From contig JAADVB010000021.1 in the NCBI GenBank assembly GCA_023334545.1, positions 61,423-125,422 of the forward strand: a DNA stretch of 64,000 nucleotides, given 5' to 3'. This document shows, in pieces, positions 35,336-60,389 of the stretch. Below the pieces are notes generated by a model. It saw only the letters and a list, made by a program, of their open reading frames with translations, was not told the origin of the DNA and searched no databases. The translations under genes were made by a program, and so were the position numbers. This DNA comes from Salisapilia sapeloensis CBS 127946. Lineage: Eukaryota; Protista; Oomycota. Position 1 is the stretch's first letter. Each line of letters begins with the position of its first letter.

Positions 35336-37324
35336 ATGCTCGTGGCGTCCGAAGACGGACGGAAGCGCGGTCATGCGCCGTCATCACCGCTCAAGACCAA
35401 AATCAAGACTCTTGCGCCACAAAGGAACAGCCAGAGACACCAGCCCACCTCGAAGTCATCATCAGAGCGAAATAAACAGGCGAATGGAGCATCGACGAAG
35501 GACGTGCTGGTGCCTGTGAATCGACCGACGCAGGCCAAGAGCACAATGACCCAGTCAAAGGAAATTTTTAAGACCAGTACGTCTATTCCTCATCGTTCTG
35601 TATCGAATACCTAGAAGCTAACGAGAACGATAGAGGACAATAGCAAGTCACAGCAGCGCAAATTGGCACGAGATCGAGACCGGCGAGAGAAACAGGTCAA
35701 GAACGATACACTCAGTGTCATGTGCGCAGATAATAGTCGCGAGCCAAAGTGTCGGACTGGCAAGAGCAAATGGTCTACGATCGACCGGCCTCGACCTTTG
35801 TCCTCCATTCCCTCTCCGAAAGGCTCGAAAGAGTCCAAGTCATCCAGTCTCTCCGATCGGTACGTCTCCTGCATCTCTACTCTCTCACTGCAACCTTATT
35901 CATAAAACTCTTTCTAGACTCCACTCTGAAATCGTACAGTACGCCAAACAGACCAAGGAACGAGTGGAGGCCATGACAGTCGACATTGAGCTCTCCATCG
36001 ACAGCGTCCGGTCCTGCGTCCTAGGTCTCTGGCCAGAGTCTCGAGTGGAAACCTACGGGTCCTACTCTACCGGCATCTGGCTCCCCTCCAGTGACGTCGA
36101 CCTCGTTATCCTCGTACGTACCATCTATCCTCCATCTCCATCCTCCTCCTAACAGCATTCGCACTACAGGGAGTTGTCGACACAGATAGCACGAAACAGA
36201 CCGTCAAGGGATTACGTAAGCTTGCCAAGGAACTGGAGGAAAAGTCCTGGGTCGAGTCCCTCGTCGTGCTCGACCGAGCCTCCATCCCGGTCCTCAAGCT
36301 CGTGAGTGCCGAGACAGGTGTGCCCATCGACATCACATTCGAGTCTTCATCCACGCACAGTGGACTCATGGCGAGAGACTTGGTCAAGCGCCACGTCGCC
36401 GAACTACCAGAGCTCTATCCTTTAGCGATCGTCTTCAAACAGCTTCTGCGTGAACGAGAGCTGAACGATGCCTACACTGGCGGTCTCAGCTCCTACTCTG
36501 CGGTCCTCATGCTCGTCCACTTCTCTCTCCTACGTCGCCACGGACCAGAGTGCTTTGAAGCAGCGGCCTTGTACGCTTCCGGAGCAGACGCACCTCCGCC
36601 TGCGACACTAGCAAAGCGTAGGAAGGAGCGACTGGACCATGAGAAAGAGGCCAAGAGCTCGGAGAAGAAAGAAAGCGAGTCGGCAGAGACAAAGGAAGTC
36701 AAGCCGCTGGTCGAGGAAAAGAAAGCGCAGACGTACAGCTATGCAGACGTTGCGTCCGGTATCCCACGCGTACCGGAGGAGAAAGCAGAGAGTAAGCCTG
36801 TGAGCTACGCTGCGGCAGTGGCTGCAGCCAAGAAAGCGCAGATGAAGAACGCGACGGTCACCAAGGCTTCATCGCCCTTGAAGCGACCTTCCTCCACCAA
36901 CGGAGAGCATCACTCGGACGTTGGTAGCGTCACCAGCAGTGCCGACACGGAGGACATTTCGTCCTGCAGCGACGGCGCGGCTTCCTCTGCCGACGTGGAA
37001 GACGAGATGGTCAACCTCGGAGAACTCGTGCTCGCTGTGCTTGAGTTCTTTGGCACAGTCTTTGACTACCGCTGCAACGGACTAAGTGTGCGTGACGGAG
37101 GGTATATCTACCGTCTGGCGAGTCCAGACGCGACCAAGCCGACGCTTGTGATCGAAGACCCGATCAACCCAGACAGGAACGTGGCCGCCAGCAGCTTTGC
37201 GTTCGCCAAAGTCGTGACGGTGTTTGAAGACGCGTACTTTGCGCTGCAGTACTTTCGCGCATCCAAGTTCACACCAACGGCACTGGGCTGTCTACTCAAG
37301 ACACAGGACCTAGGGAAACGGTAA
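35336..37324 (+). CDS. TRF4: Non-canonical poly(A) polymerase TRF4/PAPD5-like (TRAMP), multi-exon, 5' end uncertain
   Basis: VETYGSYSTGIWLPSSDVDLVI (GS and DxD), PVLKLV...VPIDITF, TGGLSSYSAVLM, PAP-associated LVIEDPINPDRNVAASSF. Confidence 0.88.
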
Positions 37325-37473
37325 CGATCTTGTCAGCGGACCTGATGGAGGTTTCGCAGGCTCGGTGCGTTCAGTGGGTTTCCATATCGCCTGTACAAAG
37401 CTTAGGTCTGTTTTCCCTGTAGCCTAAAGAAGAAATGAATCAAAGCTGGATTGAAACAAAATTAATCTCGTAT

Positions 37474-39674
37474 CTATTCCTCCTCCTCGTCCATATCGAG
37501 AGACTCATACCCGTCGGCATCGTCCGACACAGCGTCACTCTCGTCTTCCTCATCCACGTTGAGCTCCTGCATCAACGTCTGTACTCTCGATACAGCAGCA
37601 GCAGACGAGCTAAGCGAATACGAACTGTGGCGCTTCGTCGCAACCACCAAAAAGTCCTGGTCTTCCGTCTGAATCGGGTGCATGTCGTCCAGCACAACTA
37701 TAAAGCTACCGTCTTGCATCTCGTTCACCTTGGCTTTCGTCGACTCCGACACATTCTTAAGCCACTTTTCCTTGACACTCAGCAGCTCTGCGAATTCATC
37801 CATGGACAGCTGCAGCACTCGTTCAGACAAGAGCGGAAGCAAGAGATGCGCTCCGTCATCCGTAATGTCGTATGCGTCTGCCTTCGGGTGGAAGGCCATC
37901 ACGCCTGCACGATGAATGTTGAGAGGCGTGGTGAAGGAGGACGAGGCAAAGGCACTGACGTCAGGCGACACCACATGCACCTCCCGATCGCGATTCAACG
38001 CTCGGTGTTCCATAAAGTGGTACTTCTCCATCCCTTCCGGCAGCCCAAAGAAGGACTGGAGGTGCGTCAGAGTCTTGTCGCTTAAGACAGTGTAGCTGCC
38101 TAACGCCTTCTTAGCTGCCTTGGTCGGTTTCTTCGCGTACGGATTCACTGGACCTTCCTCTACTGCCTCCTCCACGACTGCCTTCTTCCGAAGAAGCGCG
38201 AGGAAGAGTCCATTGGTGTCATTCTGATGAGGAAGAAGTCGAACGCATTTATCCAGCTTCATCCACTTCTTCTCGGCGGCAGAAGGAGCCCACATGGACG
38301 GCCGCATGCGTTTCTTCTGTTCATCAGATGCAGACTTCCAGTTCTTGACGACCTTCAAGTCGTTGTCCAAAACATCCCATGAAGAGCGTCCCTTTTGTAC
38401 GTTTAAATCCGATAGGAAGGACGTGGTATCGACCAATTCATAGCTGTCCTTACTACTCCGCAAGAGCTCAGCGACCACTGCCTCATTCTCCACCTGATTA
38501 AAGGACCGAGTGACATACAGAAGACTGCCTCCGACCTTTACCATTCGCATACCCTTCTTCACCAAAGAGATCTGGGTCGAGTGGTATTGCCACGCTCGCG
38601 ATGGCGTCCACGTCCGCCACTTTTCCGGATTCTTTCGAGCAAACCCGTCGCCAGAGCAAGGAGCGCAGCAGACGACACGGTCGAATTGCTGACTTTCACC
38701 AGCCTCTGGGAAGGTTAAAGGAGCATGGGCTGTCACCATGAGCTCCGTCGACGCTGGTGCTGTTCTCGATAGGTTCCGGACAGAGTTGGTCGCCGTCGCT
38801 GCGTCCTTTTCATTCACAACAAGCCTCCCAGTGCCCAGGATGGAAGTGATACTCCCGTCCTTCTGACCCGTGAGACGTTCCAATAGCAAAGGAGCTCGGT
38901 GTTCTCCGCCACCACACAGGTCCAACACACTCTGACCGGGACTCAAGTCCAGACAATGTGCTATGATAGTCGACGCTGGTTCCTGTCGCATCAGCGTACC
39001 CAGCTGAGCCTGCGTGTGGAAGTAAGTGTTGAGCTCCCGTAGCATCTCGCTCTTGCGAAAGCTCTTGACATCCAGCGAAAGTTTCCACAGCCGCTTCGTC
39101 CCATCATACGCCACTGGCCCAAACGACACTTGGTGCTCTTCGCCAGAAGCGTGGGGAACCACTACGCCGTTCAAGTCAAAGTCCATTTCCAGCGTACCGG
39201 CGACGACGTCACTCAGGCTCAAGTAATTGCCTGTGCATTATGCGATTCTCAACTAAGTATACCGACAAATGAACGATTAAAGCATAAAGAAGACGCACCA
39301 TTGATCCGGACGTAGACTGGCATTGGCTTCTTGAGTCCTTCAAGGAAGGCGTGCCATTCATCCTGCGGCAACTGGAGCAGTTGCTTGTAGTACTTTTCAA
39401 ACGCTTCGTTCTCACGGTCAAATTTGCGCCACACAATCTTCTCTGCACGCTTCTTGGTGGACTTTGCAGCCTGCGTCTTGGCATTGTCGTGGTCATTCGC
39501 GTCCTCATTCACCTCGACGGTTCCTGCCGTCTCGAGAGACGCAAGTGGGATGGGTCCACCGGACGCTGGTCCATCTTCGTCACTGCTTCCATCACTGTGA
39601 TACGCTAACTTGGCTTTCTTATTGGCCTTGGCTGGAGCTGCCTGTCGCTTCCGTCGTCCATTCTTGGCCGCCAT
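37474..39674 (-). CDS. NSUN2: NSUN2/Trm4-family RNA m5C methyltransferase homologue with degenerate catalytic motifs (intron ~39231-39305)
   Basis: FEKYYKQLLQLPQDEWHAFLEGLKKPMPVYVRING, LMRQEPAS, FDRVVCCAPCSGDG, GGSLLYVTRSFNQVENEAVV, RLLPHQNDTNGLFLALLRK. Confidence 0.85.
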
Positions 39675-39851
39675 CGTAGTGCCCGAGGTCGTTGGCAGGC
39701 AAGGAGGTGTGTATGTTCCACCAGACATATATTATTCCTTATGAACAGATCCTGCACAGTCGTGGACACCAGACGAGACCAAGTCGAGTAGCCAAAGGTG
39801 CTTTTATCTACCTACCTTTTTCCTCTGTACATCCTACACTAGACCTACTAG

Positions 39852-42800
39852 CTAGCGCTTCTCGAGTAACGACCGTAAAGGCACAGGCATCGACTTGCGG
39901 AGGAACTGTAGAGTGTGCAGGTCGTCCGCGTGCATGTCGCTCGTCGTGGCTGTCAAGAGCTCCTTCATGAACGTCGTGTTCGATTGCTCCACCTACAGAC
40001 ACGCATATCGTTAGACGAGTACTTCCAGACACTCTTCTCCTAGATCTTACCGTTTCAAGGATGCTCCTGTCGATGGCTGGAATCGGAGACTCCTTGCTCT
40101 TGTACTCTGCCGCCGCCTCGCTCGACAGACTGGCCGCCGACATGGACAGCGCCATAGCCTGTGCCAGCAACATGGCCTCTTCATCGTCTCCTTCACTACT
40201 GGATGGAGGCGTGATGATCATGTCCTGAGGTCCATCCCCTTGGTCCTGGTTGCTCTCGGGTGCCTCGTAGCTGAGTTTCTTGTACAGGAGCAAGTAGGCA
40301 GAGTCCGAGACCGAGTTGGCCATCGTCTTGTTCAGTTCGTCCCAACTGGACCGCTCGACCCTCGTGTCATTGAACTTGATCCAAGGAGCCAGAGGAGCGT
40401 CCTTCAAGTGCAGCTGCTGCGTGCTTTCGTCGCTCTCTCGACAGAAGCTGTAGTAGTGACCAGAGTTAGCTGTCATGCCGCTGTGGACGAGCACTCCGTA
40501 GAGTCCGTACTGCCGCTTCCGCATCTCCTTCTTGGTCGCCTCCTCCTCCTGGTTTCTCGCGTCGTACAGCACTGCTTCGTCCTCTTCTCGGACCTCGGGG
40601 AGGGTCAGGAGAGGTGGGAACTGGACGTCGTGCAGGTTCTTACGCGTCTGCTGCTGCGTCCAGTCGTAGTACATACGCTTGAGCGTCAAAATGAGGTGCT
40701 GCGGAGGTTTCACCACAACCGAGTGGGCACGAGACTCAGTCTTTTTCTCACAGGTGCTGCAGGAGATGGCATTGTCACCGCCGAGCGTCCGTGTAGCTGC
40801 GAATCTCGACAGCATCGAGTCCAGGTCGTGTCGCCACATGCGTTCCGACGCGACGAGACTTCCGTCCTTCCACTCCGTCCCGTAGTCCTTCTTGAACGCG
40901 ACTCGAACGTACGAGTCCTTATAGAGCGTCCATGGTCCACCGACAGTATTATTGGAGGCGGTGGTAGCTGTGGCAGGTCCAGTGGTAGCAAGAGCTGGTT
41001 CATAGCCGCTCCACCAGCCCTTGAGCTCATCCAAGGCCCCTTGCGTCGTTAGCTCGAAGGGGTATCTGGCAGACACAGATCCCGCGACGCTGACATCATC
41101 CGAGCTCCAGAACCCAATCATAGTCTTCCCGACCGAAGTAGTCGTGTGGTAAACAACTCCTCTAACACTCCCAGGCATGGCGCCATGGACGACCGGTCCG
41201 AACCTGCCTTCAAACGATCGAGCCTCCTGGACTGTATCGACCACGGCCAGAGACAACACCTTTGGCAAGTTGGAAGCAGCAGACGTGAGCTCATACTGTC
41301 CATTCGCATCGTTCTCCATCGGCCGAACGACATCCGACAGCTGACCTTTGAGGAAGCACAAAAAGATCGACGTGCTGCCTGCGCCTTGGTTTAGGTTCGC
41401 ATCCATCCCTAGCGGCGTCTGCTGGATCTTGGTGAAGCCCGTTGGAACAGGATCTGGCGTAGGTCCAGACGTCCACATCAAGGCCAGGTCCATCAGGCAC
41501 TTTGCCTTGGACGTAGCACTCGTCGTCGCCGAGTCTCGTCGGAAGCAGATGAACATCGGAATGCCATTCGACCCGTCGTTCACGTTGGCAGACGCTCCAC
41601 ACGGCGTCTCTCGGATGCAAATGTAGTGGTCTGGTACAGCGTCGATCTCTCCATAGATGACACACACGTCACTCACGTACCCTCCTTCTGGCGCTTCAGA
41701 CGACCGACGCAGACCCAGGTACATGGGATGTGGAGCTGGTGTGTCGGCGACCAGACTGCCGGAGCGTCCGGAGCAAGTCTTGTGCAACACCTCCACTCCC
41801 TCCGGCACAGCCTCGTCTCCTCTTAACACCACCAAGTCCGAGATTGGCCACTTGCTGTCGACGCTCTTGCTCTTCTGCACTCCCTGGATATTCATGCTCT
41901 TGCCCTTGCCGTCTCCTACGAAGCCACTGAGGACGTACCCAGTGCTCTGGCCAGACCACCGAAGCTCAATGTCAAAGAGCTGCGCGTGCTTCACGCCGGA
42001 GCTCTTCCAGTACCCAGACACTTGGTAGCTATCCGGCTGGCAAGCTCCTTCCGACGCCATCGACTGACTCCAGGAGCTTGCTGCCTTGGTTGCAAGAGCA
42101 GTGATCTGTCCTCCGCCGTCGAAACGACCGTCCACACGCAGCGTCTGCCCCATGGGTTCCGACACGGACGTGACTTTAAGAGCCCGACGCGATCGGTCTG
42201 TGTCGTCTCCTGCCATCCAGTTGGCCCTGAGCGCCGTCGCATCCACCTTGTCGGCACTCGCCTGAGGATACAGATCGATGACCTCATAGTCCTGGTACTT
42301 TGGCACTTGTCTCGGCGCTCGGAAGACGTCGATGGTCGAAATGGGGTTCCCGTGGCCTCTTTGGACCATCAGTTGGGACGGAACGCTCGTTTTATCCTCC
42401 GTGTCCTGCACGTCAGACACGGAAGACGCAGGACTGCCGATCGACTTCCACCCTCGCTCCTCATACTCATGTACCTGCGCACCCTCCACCAGCTTGAGAT
42501 CCGTCAGGCAAGGCTCCTTTCCGCCGACCTTGAGGGCCAAGTACTGCTTCGCAGCGTCCTCGTGACTCAGATTGAGCAAATGGTCCACCATGCGGTACCC
42601 AGGGATGCCTCCATTTACAATCTGAAGGTCTGTCAGAGGCGTGTCTCGTCGGTAGCAAAGATAGACCTTGGCGCCGTCTCCTTGGTTCAAGTCAATGTCA
42701 ATGTGCTTGAAGCCGTCCGGGATGGACTCGCTGTTGTATGTGATCCGAAGGTCAGTGATGGCCGAGCCGTTCGGATCGCGCTTGTAGAAGAGGTACACCT

Positions 42801-45800
42801 GCTTCTTGGTAGCAGACACGCCGCCGAGGTTCAAGTCCACCTCCACTCGTTCAAACCCTACGGCCGTTGGTTTCGGGTCGGCCGCAGGGGCCACCTTGAT
42901 CATCAAGTCCGTGATCGGTCTCTCGTCGCCAGTCGTCTCGCCTGCGTCGTTCTCCGGACTGCGCTTGATGCACAAGTAGACGTAGGACGCGCCGTTGCGC
43001 TCCTTATTCAGGTCATAGTTGAGTCGTTCAAAGCCTGGTGGGGCGCCAATGCCAGAGCCAGCGCCTCCCACCGCTTCGATGCCTGTGATGGGCGTGTACT
43101 TGAGGTCGATCATGTTGAGCAAGAGTTCCCAAAAGTACTCTCGGTTGACACTCTTCTTCCCACACTCCTTGCACGCCAAGATGGTCGCCTGCTGACCTCC
43201 AAAGACATCCGCGATCTTGTCTCTCGTCTCTTGGTTCTGCGCCAGCTGCTGCGACAGGGCGTCCATGAGGAAGTGGGCAAAGTCCGACGTGTCCTGCTGC
43301 CGACCGGCTTGGAAGAGGCTCGGGAGACATCTCTGAAGGGCGTGGGAGTCGATCTTTGGGCGTTGGGAAGCAATGAGACGAGAGAAGAGTTCCTGGACAC
43401 ACTGGAGGACGTGCTTGCCGCTCTCGTCCGGCATGAAGCTGTCTGCCTTCTGCGATAAAACGAGTCTCCGAAAGGCTTGCGTCATAAAGAGCGTCTGGAG
43501 GAAAGAGTTCTGGTAGCACACATTGATCAGGTTCTGCTCCATGTTGATCAGACCAGAGTAGAACGGAGACAGAGGGCGAGGCGCTGGCTTGCTCAGGTCG
43601 CCAGGAGCTATGCCACGGAAGTCGTGCGACACTGGGGACGCCACGCACCTCCACTCGCCCGATCCGTCGCCTCGGAACCATTTGCCGTCGAAGCGAGAGA
43701 CGCTCCGGTCCCACTGGAAGAGGAAGGCATGCTTCTGCGCCTGATTCGCCTTCTGGAACGTCCCTTCCAGCTTCCACGCGCCAGAGTCATTCAGACGAGC
43801 AAGACCACTTAGGATGCCGCTGCCTTCCACGTAGACGCCATCAATGTACTCGCCCATGAAGCTACTGCCTAGTGTAAACTGGAGTTTGCCTCCCGTTGTA
43901 CTCCACTCTCCGTCCTGCAATCTCTGGACCATGTCAAGAGAGCAGGAAGACTGCGCCACCGTGTGCTTGTACTCTTGCAAAAACTGGAGGTTATTCACAG
44001 CCTCGTCATTGCCAGTCGCCTGGTTGTCTTCAGTCGTCACATCAATCGCCGTCGCTTCCGATCGACCATCCTGCGCCACTGGCGTCGGCGTACTAGCTGT
44101 CATGGACACATCAGGCGCAGTGGCGACTGGAAGCGCTTCTGCCGGTCGTTCGCTCGAACACATAAAGCACTTGGCGTCCGACGCGTTGTTCTCCATCGTA
44201 CACGCCGGACAGGTCCAGCTAGTCGAAGGAGTGGCTTGCACGACGCTCTGCTCTGCTGCTTGAGACAGCGTCGACAGTCCCGATGTCTGGCTCTGTTGGA
44301 GAGCAGCAGCAGAGGCAGAGGCTGGTCGAGGCGTGTCACAGACCGTGCATTTAGTCGCCTCAGGTGAATTCAGCATGGTACAGGCAGAGCAGGACCATTC
44401 GGACGGAATGGGGACGTTTGCTGAGGTAGACGCACTTGGACTGTCCACAGGCACGAGGGCAGTGCAGGTAGAGGGGTCTTTACTAGCGGCGGAGACAGAA
44501 GTCGTGGGAAAGGAGGGAGGTGGGGTGCCACAGACAGAGCAGAAGGACGCAGACTTGGCGTTTACGACCGTGCACTTGCCGCAGCACCAGTACGAGATGG
44601 GGATCGGCTGGTCCACGGCTGGGTGGTCTACTGCAGAGATGCTCGTAGAGCACCGGCACCACCCTCCCTGCACCTGACAAGCACACGAGGTAGTGACGAT
44701 CCCCATGCCCACGAGCTCATGTCCTTGGTGGCAGACAGCAGCACAGACGCGACAGAGCATGGCTCCATGAACTAGGTTACATGTCTGACAGCCATACGCT
44801 TCTTGGGCAAAGGCACTTCCGTCGCTCGTAGACTTGGAGCACGCCACTTGCCTCGCCTGACTGTCGTCTTTAGTCTGCTCTCCTTCCGTCTCGGACGGTC
44901 GAGAGAAGCCGTAGAGAGCAGCGATGACAGAGTCCCTCGTAGCAGGTACAGTCTCGTTGGCGATGAAGCTCAGTTTGTGGACAGACATCTCTTGCGTCGG
45001 TTTAAAGATGACTCCGAAGCGAGAGCCCTGACCTGTTTGCAGTCGTAGAGCCGTCTCCAGATCCAAGCCACTCACGAACGCAGCAGCATGGTTCCCTACC
45101 TGCAGCTCGATCGTGTGCGTCTCGATATTGTATCGAAGGTAAACTTCTAGCGCAGAGGTCGAGTGCATGTCCAGTGGCGCGAGGGACGGAGCAGAGCAGA
45201 CGAGGTAGGTCCGACGGTCGGCCATTAAGTAGAGCCCCACATCCGCTCGGAAGACACCATCAGCACCCACCTTGTACTCCATCCTTACAAAGAGCGCTCG
45301 TCCATCACACTTCGCCTCGCCTCTACCACTAGTTGTCAACGCCAGGGCCTCTCGGATGAGAGGAGACGCCTGCCAGTATGACGCGTTGCTAAAGGCGAAT
45401 ACGAACGACCCTTGTGTCGACAGACTTACTTCTAGAGACGTCTGGAAGCCTCTTTCGGTCGTCACAGGTTCCTTGGCCCACACTGCACCACCGAAAGGAC
45501 TCGAGTGGATTGACAGACGCTTGTTGCGTACAGACACCAGCCCACTCATCACAAAGGTGTTTCCGATGGAGCTAGTGAAGACGTCTCGGACAGGAAGGTC
45601 TGTTATCGACAAGCCGTAATCGAATCGACTCTTCTTGGTCATCCCTCTCGCACCATACACTTCCAACGGACACGCGTGGTTTTCGTTCCGAGACGAGTCC
45701 ACAAGCATATTGTGTCGCTCCCCCACTAGACAAAAGTATCCGACTAAGTCCTTCTCGTCCCCACACAAGGCCTGTCGGATGCAAGGGCCTTGGAAGGTGG

Positions 45801-47682
45801 AGCCAGCAAGCGTCGAAAACGCTCGAAGGTCGACGATAGCGCCTCGAAAGACATTCTCAGCAGTAGGCTCATCGCCTATGCCCAGCGTTCCTCCGATGAC
45901 AAACGCAGTCACGCTGCTCCTGTTGATAGGTCGAGTCTCCGTCTGCGGCGTACGTGCTGTGCTTACAGTCGTCTCTTCAGTAGAGCTCATGGACGTGTCG
46001 ACATCCGCCGCATCCACCTGCACCGAGAGTGAGATAGAGGAGCTTCCGAGACGCAATGTCACGTGCGTAAACTTGTTCTCCGGAACCTTTTCTCTGTCAT
46101 ACACCAGCGTGTACGTATCATGGAGAACACTGCAGCGAATATACTTATCACTCGTAAGCCCAACCTCGAGCTCGTCTCCGTTCGACACGATCGTCTGGTA
46201 CGTCCCAGTCTCCATCGGACAGATCCACACTTGCAGGACGACGTCCGACGTAGACGACAGGAGACTCACTGGTTTTTCCAGCACCAGCACATTCGCTCCG
46301 ACTCCTCTGGGCGAGTAAGCTGCATGCTTCATCCCGTCCATCTCTTTAACACTCTCCAAGGCAGACGCGAGCTGCAAATTTGACTCATTCGTCTGCCTCC
46401 GAGCCAGCCACACGCCCTGCTGGTCTCCTCGAGACCACCGGATGCGCATGAACGAGTGCGTATCGTCCATTACGGCAGAGAAAGGTGCCGGGTTATTCCC
46501 CTTGGTCGGGTCCGTCGTCATCGTCGTGGGCATGGCAGGCGCAGGGGCTGCCGTCCCGCACGTGGCACACTTAGTAGCAGTCGGCTCGTTGTTCATGGTA
46601 CAAGCGCGACAGACCCACGCAACTGCAGGAGCGCTCGCACTAGGTGCCGGCTGCGGTCCGATCATCGGGGCAGAAGAGGCTGGAGAAGCTGAAGCGTCGT
46701 ACAGTCTGCTCCAATGGCCCTCTGCGACCCACGGAACGTCGAGCGCCTGATCCGGTTTTGCCAGCACCTGCTGCATCTCCGGCAGCGCTTGGAAGATATA
46801 CCCATTGAGCTGCCTCTTCGAGTACGTGTCCTCCATGGTAGCTGTAAGCTCATACGCGAGGCAGTTGAGACGCTTCTTGAGCAGGACAGAGCCAGCGTTC
46901 TGCTGTCCAGACTGCCCTGCCACTGCCGCCGCGGCGTGGTGCTCACTGGAAAACTCGTCCGTCACCCACTTGCCTTCCACCGACGGCAGGACAGAAGCAT
47001 CGCTTTCGGGAGAAAGCACCCATGCCATCTCCCGCAGCACTTGCTCGGCAGCATCCGCCGTCGGTCGACTCCAGTCACTACCGAATGCACTCATCAGGCC
47101 CTCCTCCAGCTCCTCCGCTTCACTCGTGTACCCTCGATGGATGTGCATGAGCGCAAAGCAGGCGAGGATAAATACCTCTCGCAAGACCTGGTGTTGGGCG
47201 ACAGACCTAGCGTGCGATTCTTTCAAGCTCGAAGCCATCTCCTTGAGCTGAGGCACGGCCTTGGTGTACAGGCTAGAAGAGTGCTGGTAGCCTAGTAGGA
47301 TCTCGGTGTAGAATCGCATAGCGAGCTCTTCGTTCTCGTCTCCAGGCCGTAGCTTCTCGTAGACAGGTTCCAAGAGCTCCTCGGACGCTCTCGCCAGCGT
47401 CTCCCACTTTTTTGCTTTCTTGAGCGCGTGGAAGATGGATCGTACGAGTCGGAAGACGCCAGTGCAGTCGAAACGTTGGTCCGTCAGCAGCGTACGCTGG
47501 AGACGTACGATCTTCATGGCATCCACATTCGTCGTGGCGATGAGGAGCGCCACATCCTGGATCTCGTGCACATCCATCCCATCCCACCTTTGTCTCTCTA
47601 GATTGGAAAAGTCTGTGCTGTCCCCATGTCCGCCTAGAGCGGCCGTGACGAGCGTCCGGAGCGCATCGGAAGGACTCGCCAT
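39852..47682 (-). CDS. Giant USP (peptidase C19) deubiquitinase with 4 RanBP2/NZF zinc fingers, lectin/LamG-like region, UBR-type zinc finger, MABP-repeat insertion and UIM (intron 39993-40050)
   Basis: Cys box GLINMEQNLINVCYQNSFLQTLF; QQDTSDFAHFLMD; His box YGVLVHSGMTANSGHYYSFCR; WIKFNDTRV, SAYLLLYKK; spliced C-terminus ends SLLEKR-TAG at 39852-39854. Confidence 0.92.
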
Positions 47683-47756
47683 GTCGATTTGGAATTTATG
47701 TGGAATTACTAATCTGCAAACGAAAGACCAAGGAGCTTGAAGAGGTGCCAACCAAT

Positions 47757-55463: not shown

Positions 55464-56399
55464 ATTTTAGTTTTGGTTGACGTTGACACAATTGTAGTAG
55501 CAAACGATTACATAAGCCATTGGAAGCACAAAAAATCAAAGGAATTGGTTGTTTCATTCGTTTATCTTTATCATAAGAAAGTAAGCTGCATTCGTTCACA
55601 ATTGCAACGCAGCTCACCAAATAGCAATCGAACTCTATGATTATACGACAATGCCACTCTCACTAATGGCTGAGCCTTCATGAACATAGAAAAGCTTTAC
55701 TTCAAGGACATTTAGGACATAAGTACTTATTGACAAACAGATTTCATGTATGTCTACGTTTGGGGCCCTCTTGAAAGGAACCTCCCACCTAGGGCGGAGA
55801 TATGAACATAGAAAAATCCGCTATTTTGGATACCGTGTTGATTTAGTAGCTACAAGATAGAGCATCCCTACGACTTGCACGATTTATCTGTAGCATCCTG
55901 CAACAAGAGGATCACGTGCATTCAGTCGAGGACTTCGGCCTATAATGCTGAGTTGGCTGAACAGTGAAGTTCAGGCATGAGTCGTAGTAACTGCTTCGTT
56001 CCATTCGTAAATCGTGTTGATCTGGTTGTTCTGCTGTTGACATACGAACGCCGGGAGGATGGCTCAATCTGCACGCCAGAATTCGTCCTGAATGACTTAA
56101 TGAATAGTGAGGTGCACTCAGGTCGAGTTACTATTCCTAAAGTCCGTCATAAACACTACTGAATGTGTTTGCCTATCTTCCCTGCTGTGTCGAAAAGCGG
56201 TTTCTGCGTGTCTTAAAGTAAGATCAAGCGCCAGTCTGTGGCCAGTTGATTTTAGCCACTATCCAATATCGGCCGTTATAAAGCTGGAAAGGATTACAGC
56301 ATGAGATTTTACAGAAATATCTTGCTGGAAATTGGCTCACGAGTAGCTTGAGCGTTGAAAAGTGACATTTGAGTTAGACGACGTACAGATTGGCAGTGG

Positions 56400-59300
56400 T
56401 GGGTTTGTATACTAGTAAAATATTGCAGTTGGAGTCCATCAAAAATCTGGCTACTATTCTATTGAAACTTAAGCAGCTTTAGTGTTTACGGTAAACACCA
56501 AAGACCGTCGGCTGATCTTATAATTCTCAAATTAAAGACGATAAAATCATTCTACGTTGTTGAAGACTAATGGTTAACTTGGTGTGCGGCTTACAAGATC
56601 ACATAATAATAGACATTACTCGGCAAACTCCAGCATAATTGAATACCTTGAAAATAGATTAGCTACTACGAAAAATTTTTAAATAATGCGACTAACAACG
56701 GCAAAAACATATTCTAAAACAAAAATATCATGGCTACAAATAGCAAACTGTGTAGAAAAGATAAGAAAATCCGTAGCTAATAACAAACAAACGCATTGCG
56801 TAGTGATTTTCTTTAAGCAACAAAGAAAATTTCATTTGAAAAAAATAATTTTGTCTTCTTAAAAACGATTGAAGCTGGCTTTAAAAAATGAAATATTAAT
56901 GCAAAAACAAAACTAAAACACTTTAAAAGCAATATTTGATGGCGTTATGCTATTTATAACGTCTCGTTTGTAAAACAGGTTTATGCATAAAACAAAACAA
57001 AATAGTCAATTTACAAACGCATTGTACAGTAGACATTACGTAAAGCGTTCATTACTATTGCTTGTAAAAATACAAACTGTTGTATACTTTTAGTTGCGTT
57101 AAGCAAAGTATCATTTAATGAAAATATACTCGTCACTTTTCAAAAAAAAGCTAAGCATCAAAATATAAAACTATGTAGTTCCCATTGAAGATCTGCTTTC
57201 AGATAGACAAATAGCATATCTATATGTTTTTAAACAAAACAATTTGAACACACAAATACTTGTTAGTCACGTACCACTCCATGATGATCTATAAAACAAA
57301 TGTACAAAATAATATGTTGTCGGAAACATCAAAGTTTATATCGCGCATCAGCTTTCATAACACTTTTATTATCTATTAAAAAAACATAAACAATTTAATA
57401 ATACCTACAGACTGTTTTCTATCAAAGTATTTGATAAAACTACTTTTTGTTTAATGATACTTACTATTTACAAATCAACAACTTCAGCATTATTTGTCAT
57501 TTAATTTGTTTAACATAAAGCAATTAATTTATTACAGCAAAAAAAATTACTAGCAGTTCAATGCTGAAACAACTTAGAGCCTTATACAACAAAACATTAA
57601 TAGTATTTAGAAAAATAAAAACGTGAATAAACAAAAAATGTTCTATTAAATCCTAAAATTTTACAAAAAATCGAATATAGAGCTAGGTAAAATAGTGCTT
57701 GTTTTACAGTGTTCTGTGTATAACAAAACAAATATATTGAATCGTCGTTAAAGCGCATTAAAATAGTAATATAATGCTACATATGTACATGTTTTTTTTA
57801 TTTATAAGTAGCAAATAGTTTTCATAATACGCTGCCTTAAGTTATTATTTAGTGCATTATATAAAAAACTAATGACTTTTATTTTTTGTTTCAAAAGCAT
57901 TTGATATCTATTTAAAAACATTATATTATTTCGACATTGTAACTTGGTGTCATTTACGCCACGTATCATGTAAAACCATGTAGTATGCAAATAAAACAAA
58001 CATGTTAAAAATATAATGCTTTTCGCAAACAAAATGTCTGTTATCAATATAAGAAGCAATACAAAACATTACATCTTATACATAAGCTACAAGTAAGCAA
58101 GTTTAAATTATTTACAAATTTGCTAGACGATATTTAATCTTGCATGCCATATATTTAGCGTTTTTTACGCTTTATTAACTCGTATGCTTCTATAAAATAG
58201 TTAGTTAAATTTGCAGCAATGCCCGTTGTTATATTTTTTTGTTAAATCTGGTTTTGCTAAATCATTAAAGCAAGATTTATTTTATGCATGTTTTATAAAC
58301 TTATAGAATATAATTTGCAATTTTACGAAGTAAAATTTTTTTCAGTATATAGTCTTATAGAGTTTAATTGTAGTATTTCCTTTTTTAATTATTTGTTCAA
58401 TTTTATTTGTTTTAAAAAATTTTATTCTATCAAGTCTTTTGTATTTTCTGCAGCATTATTTTTATTTTCTGTGTGCCTATAAGCATTTATAACATTTAAA
58501 AAGTATTGATTTTGTTCTTGTAAACTTTACAAAAATATTTGTTGAAAACGTTATACAAGTTACAGTTTTATATTATAGTCTGCATTTTTTAAGAATGCTT
58601 TAACCATGAGGTTTTTCATGTTCGATGCTCTTTTATTTAATTATTTTCCTTTAAGTTGTTTATGATATGTTGACTTGTATTTATGTTGCAATTATAAAAA
58701 CAAAAATCTTTTGTAAAATTCGTTTCAAAATAAACTGACTAAACTTCTTTGCAAAAGTTTTATATGGTTTGTAAATGTTAAGTTCTACACATGTAAACAA
58801 CAACATTTATTTTAAACCTTTTATAGTACATAATCGCAAAAAAAGTACATGCAATTAATCTATATTAAATAATTTTTTACAGTTTTGTAAGAAAATTGAC
58901 TGCATATTTTTTATCAGTATTTTATATCAAAATTTTATTATCTTGTTGATGTTTTCTTTATGCTATAGAGTACGCTTCATGATTGTTTAGAGATCATAAA
59001 ACCTTTAAAATTTGCTTTATACAACATAAGAAAGTTGAGTTTCAATAAAATTTTATTTTGATTTGTTTTTTTAACATTCTGATTTTATACAATTAGCACA
59101 TGAAAATCATATAAATTTTGTGTATTTGTATGTTTAAAAGACGTATTTAGAAAATTAATTTTTATATTTTAGAATTTTTGACCGTCTAAATATGATTAAG
59201 TCAAACACATTGTAATTTAAGATTTTTAAATTTATTCTTAAATAGACAGAACATTTTAGTACTTACAGTGATAACCAGAAATCTACGCGAAGTCCTTTTA

Positions 59301-59420
59301 TTGTAGTAAAAAATTGAGGTTTCTTAGCATTCGTAACGTAAAAAATTTAAGTGCTATACTTTATAAACATATGTTCTTGTTGGTAACTTTTTCTGTTGAA
59401 GTACTATGGCGAGCTTTGTA
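56400..59420. other. Gene-free AT-rich (~21-26% GC) degenerate island, probable hypermutated relic
   Basis: Hand counts of 78, 73 and 64 G+C per 300 nt in three samples; no ORF of 100 aa or more; strong CC/GG and GA depletion. Confidence 0.75.
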
Positions 59421-59666
59421 TATTTAATAAAGGAGCGCTGTTGCTATTGGCATTAGAAGTGATCTCTTCATGAATTTGTCCAAAAGATAGGATCCTAAAT
59501 TTTTAGTGTAGTAATTATCATATAAATATAGATCTAAGGGATGTGCAGTGACCAAATTCACTACGTTGTGTCTTCCTTGTCCACGATAGGTACCTTTTGA
59601 GTAGACCACATAAGAAAAAGTATGTGTGCATAGAGCTGGGAAACAATCGCGTGTTGGCCTTTTTAT

Positions 59667-60389
59667 TTAAGCATTTAGTGTGCGTTCATAGCTGGCCATT
59701 TGCTGAGCTGCTTCGGAGATGCTTACTTCGACCTTAATGACACCGCGGCGTTCTAGAGCTTCCAATGTAAAAGCTTCGACGAGTCGGTTGCTCTAGACAC
59801 ACATACGTTTTGTCAGCTAGTTGATGTGGTGCAGTAAGCTAACAATGTTACAAAGTAAACGGCGAGGTTTTCGGCAGACGAGTGCGTGATAGGTAATAGC
59901 GAGCAATCTGATTTTGGGAAGCTATGTGACGCGAGTTCAGTTTCTGGAGCTAGCGTATATGCATACATGTCACGCTGTGAGAGTCCTACCTGAAAGAAGC
60001 TTTGTCTTCAGTCTCGATACGCACGTTGTCATCGTTGATACTGATCTGTGCATCAGACAAGTTTGTTACAGAATGGTACAGTAGTAAGAAGTTCGATGTA
60101 TGAGAACCTCAAGTGCTTGGCTCTTCATGGGAACGAGGAAGGACTCGTTCATTTCTCGACAGATCGATTTCGAAATGCGCTTGATTTCACCAAAATCGAC
60201 GACATATCCGTCGTGGCCAACTCTCCCTGTAAGCGTAACACCCACGCGGTAGTTGTGGCCATGCAGTTTCTCTCGGAATCCTTTGTACGCGATGAAATGG
60301 GCTGCATTAAACTTCATATAGTCCTTCGATACGTGTACTTTAAACACTTCGCCGTCTTTAGATCCTATCGTAGCTGTAGTCGAGGCCAT
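59667..60389 (-). CDS. 6-pyruvoyl-tetrahydropterin synthase family, PTPS-III type (Glu active site), multi-exon
   Basis: MKFNAAHFI, FREKLHGHNYRVGV (ExxHGH), VVDFGEIK; downstream exons FPKSDCSLLPITHSSAENLAVY and VEVSISEAAQQMASYE, then TAA at 59667-59669. Confidence 0.88.

What the first reader, a model, noticed from the sequence alone, without database searches (positions are those of the whole stretch)
38490..38950. NSUN2/Trm4 homologue with the catalytic cysteine replaced: probable pseudoenzyme
Motif VI YSTCS (nucleophile Cys, C321 in human NSUN2) reads YVTRS, with a CGG codon at 38506-38508, two changes from a Cys codon and so unlikely to be a sequencing error. Motif I DMCAAPGSKT reads DLCGGGEHRA, and motif IV DVPC reads CAPC (Asp lost, release Cys kept). 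The 680+ aa frame is otherwise intact with conserved NSUN2 flanks, which implies selection for a non-catalytic role such as tRNA-binding scaffold or partner of an active paralogue (inference).
Basis: partly seen in the sequence, partly recalled or inferred. Interest (0 to 1): 0.7.

Follow-up and report, generated by a model that had tools for sequence, protein, structure and literature searches.

The report
Conserved dead NSUN2 paralogue of oomycetes
This oomycete gene encodes a copy of the tRNA cytosine-methylating enzyme NSUN2 that has lost its catalytic cysteine and its tRNA-end pocket. All sampled oomycetes keep it under strong selection next to intact copies, so it is a real, undescribed pseudoenzyme with an unknown non-catalytic job.

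Summary
The gene lies on the minus strand in two exons (CDS 39674-39298 and 39229-37474, 710 aa). Spliced transcript contigs confirm the 68-nt intron.

- Motif VI is Y-V-T-R-S, with Arg367 (CGG, 38508-38506) in place of the nucleophile Cys (human C321).
- Motif I is DLCGGGEHRA.
- Motif IV is CCAPC.

The change is ancient and fixed, not an error or decay. 47 of 48 database orthologues carry T-R-[S/A], and all named ones are oomycetes (Phytophthora to Saprolegnia). 97 of 97 active NSUN2-type proteins keep Cys.

The Arg codon varies synonymously (CGG/CGA). dN/dS between two Phytophthora species is 0.066, as low as for the active paralogues (0.072 and 0.119).

The same genome has two intact NSUN2-type genes. 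Other oomycetes have up to three.

The PUA pocket that holds tRNA ends in human NSUN2 is also dismantled (R602 to E/D, W680 to V/T/M). A canonical tRNA-binding scaffold is therefore unlikely.

Best reading: a remodelled, non-catalytic, probably RNA-binding pseudoenzyme. A heterodimer test with the canonical paralogue gave no verdict. I found no paper describing this family.

The parts
39298..39674 (-). Exon 1 coding part (Met1 to first base of Gly126 codon): basic/acidic N-terminal extension with the P-I-P-L-A-S-L motif (39554-39534) and the NSUN2-type N-terminal helix (F-D-R-E-N-x-A-F-E-x-Y-Y)
   Evidence: Transcript contig X4 record 4 starts at 39699, so the upstream ATG at 39728 lies outside the transcript. 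Orthologue alignment.
39230..39297 (-). Intron, 68 nt, GT..AG on the minus strand
   Evidence: Skipped in contigs of X2 and X4; a near-identical splice is seen in X6 and X7.
37474..39229 (-). Exon 2 coding part including the stop (37474-37476): RsmB/F-type methyltransferase domain, pre-PUA and PUA-like domain, acidic tail
   Evidence: Pfam PF01189 1.6e-19, with PF25376/PF25378 weak. Human NSUN2 7e-48. AF2 model pLDDT 88.3, pTM 0.89. Foldseek top hits RsmF/YebU over about 520 columns.
38893..38922 (-). Motif I, D229-L-C-G-G-G-E-H-R-A238 (canonical D-M-C-A-A-P-G-S-K-T)
   Evidence: G232, G234, R237 and A238 are invariant in the clade, while A, P, K and T are invariant in active proteins.
38809..38811 (-). 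Motif II acidic residue, Glu266 (Asp215 in human NSUN2)
   Evidence: Glu in 31 of 31 clade members, Asp in 97 of 98 active proteins.
38644..38670 (-). Motif IV, C313-C-A-P-C317-S-G-D-G: Asp268 equivalent lost (Cys314), release Cys271 equivalent kept (Cys317)
   Evidence: position 314 is C/S/T/Y in the clade and D in 98 of 98 active proteins. Cys317 is kept in 31 of 31.
38503..38517 (-). Motif VI, Y364-V-T-R367-S368; the Arg codon CGG at 38508-38506 replaces the nucleophile Cys
   Evidence: Organism B reads CGA (38506 C>T, synonymous).
37867..37869 (-). Asp580, the equivalent of human Arg602 (contacts tRNA 5' nucleotide U1)
   Evidence: R in 81 of 81 active proteins; E/D/S/K/V in the clade. Contact taken from preprint 10.64898/2026.03.16.712100.
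37627..37641 (-). PUA strand A656-T-K-R-H660, the equivalent of human G679-W680-R-G-K683 (3' CCA pocket). The Trp is lost. A656 (36 of 37), Arg659 and His660 are invariant or nearly so in the clade.
   Evidence: W in 79 of 81 active proteins; V/T/M/I/N in the clade.
37477..37521 (-). Acidic C-terminal tail with the conserved D-G-Y-[DE]-S-hydrophobic-acid-hydrophobic-acid motif; predicted disordered
   Evidence: Alignments. pLDDT below 50 for ORF residues 565-582.
37433..39699 (-). Extent of the transcript as one discrete spliced contig (2199 nt)
   Evidence: run X4 record 4.

Best explanation
This is an expressed nuclear gene of an oomycete. It encodes a 710-aa paralogue of the tRNA m5C methyltransferase NSUN2/Trm4 that can no longer make m5C. 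It has no motif VI Cys to attack C6 (Arg367 instead). It has no motif IV Asp to hold and protonate the cytosine (Cys314). Its SAM-loop is rewritten (A-A-P-G-S-K-T to G-G-G-E-H-R-A). The fold is intact. The changes sit in the two substrate pockets, namely the catalytic pocket and the PUA pocket for the tRNA 5'/3' ends. The new residues are themselves invariant across oomycetes, so the pockets were remodelled and then frozen rather than left to decay. The gene arose before the Saprolegniales/Peronosporales split. It has since evolved under purifying selection as strong as that on the active paralogues that coexist with it. Shown: the loss of catalytic residues, the conservation, the expression and the presence of active paralogues. 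Inferred: that it has no m5C activity. My most likely mechanism, at about 50% and inferred, is a non-catalytic RNA-binding protein. It would use the retained basic groove of the methyltransferase domain (K185, R237, R277, R281, R324/K325) on an RNA engaged differently from the way NSUN2 holds tRNA. It is probably nuclear, given the Lys/Arg-rich N-terminus.
For: Homology and fold: Pfam PF01189; human NSUN2 is the best solved relative, 7e-48; AF2 pLDDT 88.3 with Foldseek hits to RsmF/YebU, NOP2, aTrm4 and NSUN6. Catalytic losses. Published mechanism and mutagenesis say the motif VI Cys is the nucleophile and is essential, and the motif IV Asp protonates N3 (PMC6409601; preprint). Conservation: 47 of 48 orthologues have T-R-[S/A], and the clade is monophyletic with 100% support on a stem of about 1.1 substitutions per site. 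The profile search finds clade members only from oomycetes, then a gap from 678 to 370 bits. Selection: dN/dS is 0.066 overall and 0.059 in the methyltransferase core, against 0.072 and 0.119 for active paralogues in the same species pair. pN/pS is 0.19 between organisms A and B. The Arg codon is CGG or CGA. Expression: spliced contigs in two studies. Active paralogues in the same genome: contig C656 (canonical) and contig C1355 (CCHC zinc knuckle), both with D-M-C-A-[AS]-P-G-S-K, C-D-x-P-C and Y-S-T-C. Orthology: conserved neighbourhood with the giant USP gene in Phytophthora. Remodelling rather than decay: sites conserved in both groups but with different residues cluster in motifs I, II and VI and in the PUA strand. 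Retained RNA contacts (K138, R230, R278/K279) and lost ones (K219, N280, R602, W680): with contacts.
Against: No biochemical data exist. SAM binding cannot be excluded, because the motif II acid is kept as Glu in every member and the new loop is Gly-rich like motif I of other class I methyltransferases. The motif IV Cys is kept in every member, and its role in a dead enzyme is unexplained. RNA binding is inferred only from retained basic residues. The origin of the clade is unresolved: the AU test does not reject a sister relation to the oomycete canonical NSUN2 (p 0.21) and is borderline for the A/B paralogues (p 0.047).
Confidence: 0.8

Rival explanations
1. It is still an enzyme. Either it uses the retained motif IV Cys317 as nucleophile, as DNMT-type m5C methyltransferases do, or it transfers a methyl group to an N or O atom without covalent catalysis, or it binds SAM/SAH as a sensor.
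For: Cys317 is invariant. Glu266 is kept at the SAM-ribose position and the loop is Gly-rich. The pocket residues are frozen, not drifting. DNMT enzymes do use the motif IV Cys (PMC6409601).
Against: DNMT-type chemistry needs a motif VI Glu to protonate N3, and a base for elimination. Here motif VI has Arg, and the motif IV Asp that protonates N3 in NSUN enzymes is also gone. Four invariant positions of the SAM loop (A185, P187, K190, T191) are all replaced. No N-methyltransferase-type (D/N)PP(Y/F) motif is seen.
Confidence: 0.08
2. It is a non-catalytic subunit that pairs with one of the active NSUN2 paralogues and steers or activates it. This would resemble METTL14 with METTL3, Trm6 with Trm61 or DNMT3L with DNMT3A (analogies from general knowledge).
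For: Oomycetes that have the dead copy also have active NSUN2-type genes. Dead paralogues of methyltransferases often act this way. Purified human NSUN2 shows some dimers.
Against: NSUN2 works on tRNA as a 1:1 monomer. No evidence of contact was obtained here (see Tried and rejected). The dead copy's own substrate pockets are remodelled and conserved, which a mere scaffold would not need.
Confidence: 0.1
3. It is an artefact or a decaying pseudogene: a sequencing or assembly error at the Cys codon, or a recently inactivated copy.
For: None beyond the missing Cys.
Against: Independent transcript contigs read Arg, and a relative reads a synonymous Arg codon. 47 of 48 orthologues across the oomycetes have Arg. 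The frame is intact at 710 aa. dN/dS is 0.066.
Confidence: 0.01

Closest known systems
Human NSUN2 / yeast Trm4 (tRNA cytosine-C5 methyltransferase)
   Same: Best solved relative (7e-48). It shares the architecture: N-terminal helix, RsmB/F methyltransferase domain, pre-PUA and PUA-like domain. Kept residues include motif IV P-C-S-G-D-G-x-x-R-K, motif VI Y-x-T and N-P-x-E-N-E-A-V, and the K138 and R230 equivalents.
   Different: C321 to Arg, D268 to Cys, and motif I rewritten. K219, N280, R602 and W680 equivalents are lost. It has an added acidic/basic N-terminal extension and an acidic C-terminal tail.
Arabidopsis TRM4A (NSUN2 paralogue lacking motif I)
   Same: An NSUN2 duplicate that coexists with an active copy (TRM4B) and is thought to be inactive. 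The trm4a mutant keeps all tRNA m5C (PMC4535395).
   Different: TRM4A has a deletion of motif I in one plant lineage. The oomycete protein keeps every motif in place but has substituted the key residues. It is conserved across a whole class of organisms with dN/dS 0.066, and it has also remodelled its PUA pocket. The two are independent events (plant NSUN2s form their own clade).
Bacterial RsmF/YebU (16S rRNA m5C methyltransferase with PUA-like C-terminal domain)
   Same: Top structural matches of the model, aligned over about 490-520 columns (E 1e-18 to 2e-20).
   Different: Only 16-19% identity. RsmF/YebU are active enzymes with both Cys.
Dead-paralogue partners of nucleic-acid methyltransferases (METTL14, Trm6, DNMT3L); from general knowledge, not tested here
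   Same: Enzyme-derived and catalytically dead, yet conserved.
   Different: Those act in obligate complexes with the active paralogue. No such complex is shown here.

Membership tests
NOL1/NOP2/Sun (RsmB/F) RNA m5C methyltransferase superfamily | RsmB/F-type Rossmann methyltransferase domain | tested here: met
   PF01189 at 70.8 bits, above the cut-off of 27. AF2 model with Foldseek hits to RsmF, YebU, NOP2, aTrm4, NSUN6 and NSUN5.
NOL1/NOP2/Sun (RsmB/F) RNA m5C methyltransferase superfamily | Motif VI Thr-Cys, with the Cys as nucleophile | tested here: not met
   T366-R367 here, and Arg in 47 of 48 orthologues. Cys in 97 of 97 active proteins.
NOL1/NOP2/Sun (RsmB/F) RNA m5C methyltransferase superfamily | Motif IV Asp-x-Pro-Cys (Asp orients and protonates cytosine; Cys releases the product) | tested here: not met
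   C314-A-P-C317: the Asp is lost (C/S/T/Y in the clade) and the Cys is kept.
NOL1/NOP2/Sun (RsmB/F) RNA m5C methyltransferase superfamily | Motif I SAM loop D-x-C-A-[AS]-P-G-x-K-T | tested here: not met
   D-L-C-G-G-G-E-H-R-A; four invariant positions are replaced.
NOL1/NOP2/Sun (RsmB/F) RNA m5C methyltransferase superfamily | SAM binding and m5C formation | not testable with these tools
   Needs protein biochemistry.
NSUN2/Trm4 subfamily | Closest relatives are NSUN2/Trm4 rather than NOP2, NSUN4, NSUN5 or NSUN6 | tested here: met
   NSUN2 at 7e-48, against NSUN6 at 5e-8 and NOP2 at 2e-4. The clade branches among eukaryotic NSUN2-type proteins.
NSUN2/Trm4 subfamily | Pre-PUA and PUA domains after the methyltransferase domain | tested here: inconclusive
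   PF25376 at 21.1 bits and PF25378 at 13.9 bits, both below cut-off. However, the model is confident there, and RsmF aligns through its C-terminal domain.
NSUN2/Trm4 subfamily | PUA pocket for tRNA termini (human R602, W680) | tested here: not met
   R in 81 of 81 and W in 79 of 81 active proteins. Here D580 and T657, with no aromatic residue in 37 clade members.
Pseudoenzyme (operational definition) | Clear homologue of an enzyme family that lacks residues essential for its chemistry | tested here: met
Pseudoenzyme (operational definition) | Maintained by purifying selection and expressed | tested here: met
   dN/dS 0.066, pN/pS 0.19, spliced transcripts.
Pseudoenzyme (operational definition) | Demonstrated lack of catalytic activity | not testable with these tools
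   Inferred from mutagenesis of Nop2, NSUN2 and Trm4 cited in PMC6409601.

The most novel reading that the evidence does not exclude
The former active site has become a ligand-reading pocket. The invariant new residues (Arg367, Arg237, Glu/Asp235, His236, Glu266) together with the retained base-flipping loop (P-C-S-G-D-G-x-x-R-K) would let the protein capture a flipped-out, possibly modified, base of an RNA, or bind SAM/SAH. That would turn an m5C writer into a reader or a metabolic sensor specific to oomycetes.
Probability: 0.15. Interest if true: 0.8.

Novelty: new variant of a known kind. Interest (0 to 1): 0.48.

Why it matters
Pseudoenzymes derived from nucleic-acid methyltransferases are often key regulators (METTL14, DNMT3L). 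No conserved dead member of the NSUN2/Trm4 branch appears in the papers I could search. The nearest precedent is the lineage-restricted Arabidopsis TRM4A.

This one is fixed across the oomycetes, a group that includes major crop and fish pathogens. It is as constrained as the active enzymes and is absent from plant and animal hosts as far as the searches show. It is therefore a clean entry point into oomycete-specific RNA biology.

Database names such as "tRNA (cytosine-5-)-methyltransferase NSUN2-like" probably overstate its function.

Tried and rejected
1. Co-fold of the dead protein (ORF residues 1-560) with the canonical paralogue's methyltransferase exon. The score was 0.00, the tool's verdict was "no answer", and the tool did not use my alignments. 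This is evidence neither for nor against binding.

2. The "careful" ML tree with the mixture model did not finish in 450 s. The AU test under the mixture model made no progress. I used quick trees and an AU test under LG+G4 on 27 rows instead. The origin of the clade stays unresolved.

3. The Foldseek PDB library did not contain the 2026 NSUN2 entries, so the best structural hits are RsmF/YebU. The NSUN2 relation rests on sequence.

4. Literature searches for an oomycete NSUN2 pseudoenzyme, and for the P. infestans accessions (D0MWM7, XP_002907476, EEY64040), found nothing relevant.

5. Sequencing error and pseudogene readings were rejected.

6. I considered a metal site formed by C231, C313, C314, C317 and H236. 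I rejected it because position 314 (C/S/T/Y) and position 236 (H/Q/N/S) vary within the clade.

7. I considered a link to the convergent Cid1/Trf4-type gene next door. The neighbour is not conserved in Phytophthora, where a Macro-domain gene sits instead.

8. I did not run the exhaustive representative-protein search. The word-index profile search already gave a sharp gap, but the claim "restricted to oomycetes" is limited by that.

9. Following the operators' note, all database searches and folds used the exon-2 ORF by reference, and exon 1 was scanned apart. The joined 710-aa model was built only inside scripts from the window file. It served for numbering, for classing substitutions and as one row of the trees.

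Full report
**What is in the sequence.**
The finding lies inside a minus-strand gene. The six-frame list gives a 582-aa ORF at 37474-39222 and an upstream ORF that ends in a GT..AG intron. Contigs of public runs laid on 37400-39800 skip 39230-39297 in two runs of organism A (100% identical to the window). Two runs of organism B, about 96% identical, skip almost the same interval. Genomic DNA keeps the intron, so these contigs come from spliced RNA and the gene is expressed.

One contig of 2199 nt spans 39699 to 37433 and nothing more. This places the start codon at 39674, not at the upstream ATG at 39728. The model is 710 aa.

**The motifs.**
Pfam assigns the RsmB/F methyltransferase domain (PF01189, 70.8 bits), with weak NSUN2 pre-PUA and PUA matches. 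The best solved relative is human NSUN2 (7e-48), far ahead of NSUN6, NOP2 and bacterial RsmB/F. In that alignment:
- Human D182-MCAAPGSKT reads D229-LCGGGEHRA.
- C267-DVPC271 reads C313-CAPC317.
- T320-C321 reads T366-R367.

The Arg codon is CGG at 38508-38506.

**Not an error and not decay.**
Organism B differs at 38506 (C>T on the plus strand). That turns CGG into CGA, which is still Arg. P. infestans uses CGA and P. nicotianae uses CGG.

The word-index search with the ORF and a second search with a profile of the clade returned 48 clade members. Named members come from Phytophthora, Peronospora, Bremia, Plasmopara, Peronosclerospora, Nothophytophthora, Pythium, Globisporangium, Lagenidium, Aphanomyces, Saprolegnia, Achlya and Thraustotheca. 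The rest are unnamed metagenome or run assemblies.

47 of the 48 read T-R-[S/A]. The exception is a divergent alternative gene model. After the clade, the profile score drops from 678 to 370 bits, and everything below carries the canonical motifs.

Column counts are shown below.

| Human NSUN2 residue | Dead clade | Active NSUN2-type proteins |
|---|---|---|
| C321 | Arg in 31 of 31 | Cys in 97 of 97 |
| K190 | Arg in 31 of 31 | Lys in 97 |
| D215 | Glu in 31 of 31 | Asp in 97 |
| D268 | C/S/T/Y | Asp in 98 of 98 |
| C271 | kept in all | kept in all |

**Selection.**
The Phytophthora orthologue is intronless and sits beside the same giant USP gene as in the window, so orthology is secure. Nei-Gojobori estimates for P. 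infestans against P. nicotianae are shown below.

| Gene or region | dN/dS |
|---|---|
| Dead paralogue, whole gene (dS 0.77) | 0.066 |
| Dead paralogue, methyltransferase core | 0.059 |
| Active paralogue A (zinc knuckle) | 0.072 |
| Active paralogue B | 0.119 |

Between organisms A and B, the 40 listed differences in codons 364-690 split 24 synonymous to 16 non-synonymous. That gives pN/pS 0.19. The dead copy is as constrained as the live ones.

**Active paralogues.**
The window's own assembly (22.4 Mb) holds two intact NSUN2-type genes.
- The gene on contig C656 is the orthologue of the canonical Phytophthora NSUN2 (99% support).
- The gene on contig C1355 carries a CCHC zinc knuckle.

Both have the full motifs I, IV and VI. 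Other oomycetes have up to three active types (canonical, A and B) plus the dead one.

**Where it came from.**
The dead clade is monophyletic (100%) on a long stem of about 1.1 substitutions per site. It splits into Saprolegniales and Peronosporales/Pythiales, so it predates that divergence. Its position among eukaryotic NSUN2s is unresolved. An AU test does not reject a sister relation to the oomycete canonical NSUN2 (p 0.21). The test is borderline for a union with the A/B paralogues (p 0.047). Long-branch effects are likely.

**What else changed.**
I used the contacts listed in the 2026 cryo-EM preprint on human NSUN2 with tRNA and compared them across the alignment.

Kept:
- the K138 equivalent (U54 contact)
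- R230
- R278/K279
- the whole P-C-S-G-D-G loop

Lost:
- K219 (hinge clamp; K in 88 of 98 active proteins)
- N280

Most telling is the PUA pocket for the tRNA ends:
- R602 is invariant in 81 active proteins. In the clade it is E/D in 27 of 37 members and S, K or V in the rest.
- W680 is present in 79 of 81 active proteins. Here it is V/T/M/I/N, and never aromatic.

The sites that are conserved in both groups but with different residues are L230, G232, G234, R237, A238, E266, A275, R277, R367, N462, D463 and R659. These fall in the catalytic pocket and the PUA strand.

The structure model is confident (pLDDT 88.3, pTM 0.89) and matches RsmF/YebU over both domains. The protein is a well-folded NSUN2 shell whose two substrate pockets were rebuilt and then frozen.

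**Mechanism.**
By the accepted two-cysteine mechanism, the motif VI Cys attacks C6, the motif IV Asp protonates N3, and the motif IV Cys releases the product. Mutating the motif VI Cys abolishes function (PMC6409601; preprint). With Arg and Cys at the first two positions, m5C synthesis is not expected. This is an inference, not a measurement.

I put about 80% on a non-catalytic protein. Within that:
- About half goes to an RNA binder that uses the retained basic groove but not the canonical tRNA-end grip.
- About 10% goes to a partner of an active paralogue.
- The rest goes to other scaffolding roles.

SAM or SAH binding remains possible, because Glu266 is kept and the loop is Gly-rich. An alternative chemistry gets about 8%. 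The co-fold with the canonical paralogue returned no verdict and counts for nothing.

**Comparison with known cases.**
The nearest described case is Arabidopsis TRM4A, an NSUN2 duplicate with motif I deleted and no effect on tRNA m5C when knocked out (PMC4535395). That is a separate, plant-specific event.

I found no paper on an oomycete NSUN2 pseudoenzyme, nor on the P. infestans accession. Databases name these proteins as tRNA or rRNA methyltransferases, which is probably wrong as to activity.

**Verdict.**
The suggested tRNA-scaffold role is weakened by the loss of the tRNA-end pocket. This is a new variant of a known kind: a clade-wide, strongly constrained, dead NSUN2 paralogue. It is of moderate interest.

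**Limits.**
- No biochemistry was done.
- Distribution outside oomycetes was tested only with word-indexed searches.
- The trees are quick searches.
- Database searches used the exons by reference. The joined model was used only inside scripts.

Noticed in passing
window 35715-37324 (+): A Cid1/Trf4-type non-canonical poly(A) polymerase gene converges on the 3' end of the dead NSUN2 gene. It comprises two ORFs, 35715-36152 and 36266-37324, with Pfam MTPAP-like/NTP_transf_2 and PAP_assoc hits, probably split by a short intron. The neighbour is not conserved in Phytophthora, where a Macro-domain gene sits there.
   Followed up: partly
G000 contig C1355 (L011 928-2277, minus strand): This active NSUN2-type paralogue carries a CCHC zinc knuckle (PF13696) after the methyltransferase domain. 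The same architecture is seen in Phytophthora, Pythium, Saprolegnia, Aphanomyces and Albugo orthologues.
   Followed up: partly
related proteins P0090-P0220: Oomycetes carry up to four NSUN2-type genes: canonical, zinc-knuckle A, B and dead. The window's 22.4-Mb assembly shows canonical, A and dead, but no B-type copy. No Albugo member of the dead clade appeared in the searches.
   Followed up: partly
window 39808-47751 (-) and L017/L018: The 2647-aa USP-type gene next to the dead NSUN2 gene is also its neighbour in P. infestans and P. nicotianae, in divergent orientation there. This is conserved microsynteny across distant oomycetes.
   Followed up: partly
window 37434-39800, run X2 record 2: One 10,116-nt transcript-derived contig runs from the dead NSUN2 gene on into the upstream USP gene, and only 133 nt separate the USP stop from the NSUN2-like ATG. 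In run X4 the two genes give separate contigs, ending at 39699 and starting at 39707. Overlapping or read-through transcription is possible but not shown.
   Followed up: no
window 37477-37521 and 39534-39554 (-): Two short motifs specific to the dead clade lie in predicted disordered ends: an N-terminal I-P-L-x-S-L-E and a C-terminal D-G-Y-[DE]-S-hydrophobic-acid-hydrophobic-acid inside an acidic tail. Both are conserved from Saprolegniales to Peronosporales and are candidate docking motifs.
   Followed up: no
window 56001-60000: GC content drops to 0.29-0.31 in an otherwise 0.49-0.58 window. Another report of this scan has already treated this.
   Followed up: no
protein P0038 (P. infestans, 689 aa): A second database gene model of the P. 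infestans dead paralogue is only 43% identical to the query and lacks the motif VI match. It is probably a mis-predicted model rather than a variant.
   Followed up: no
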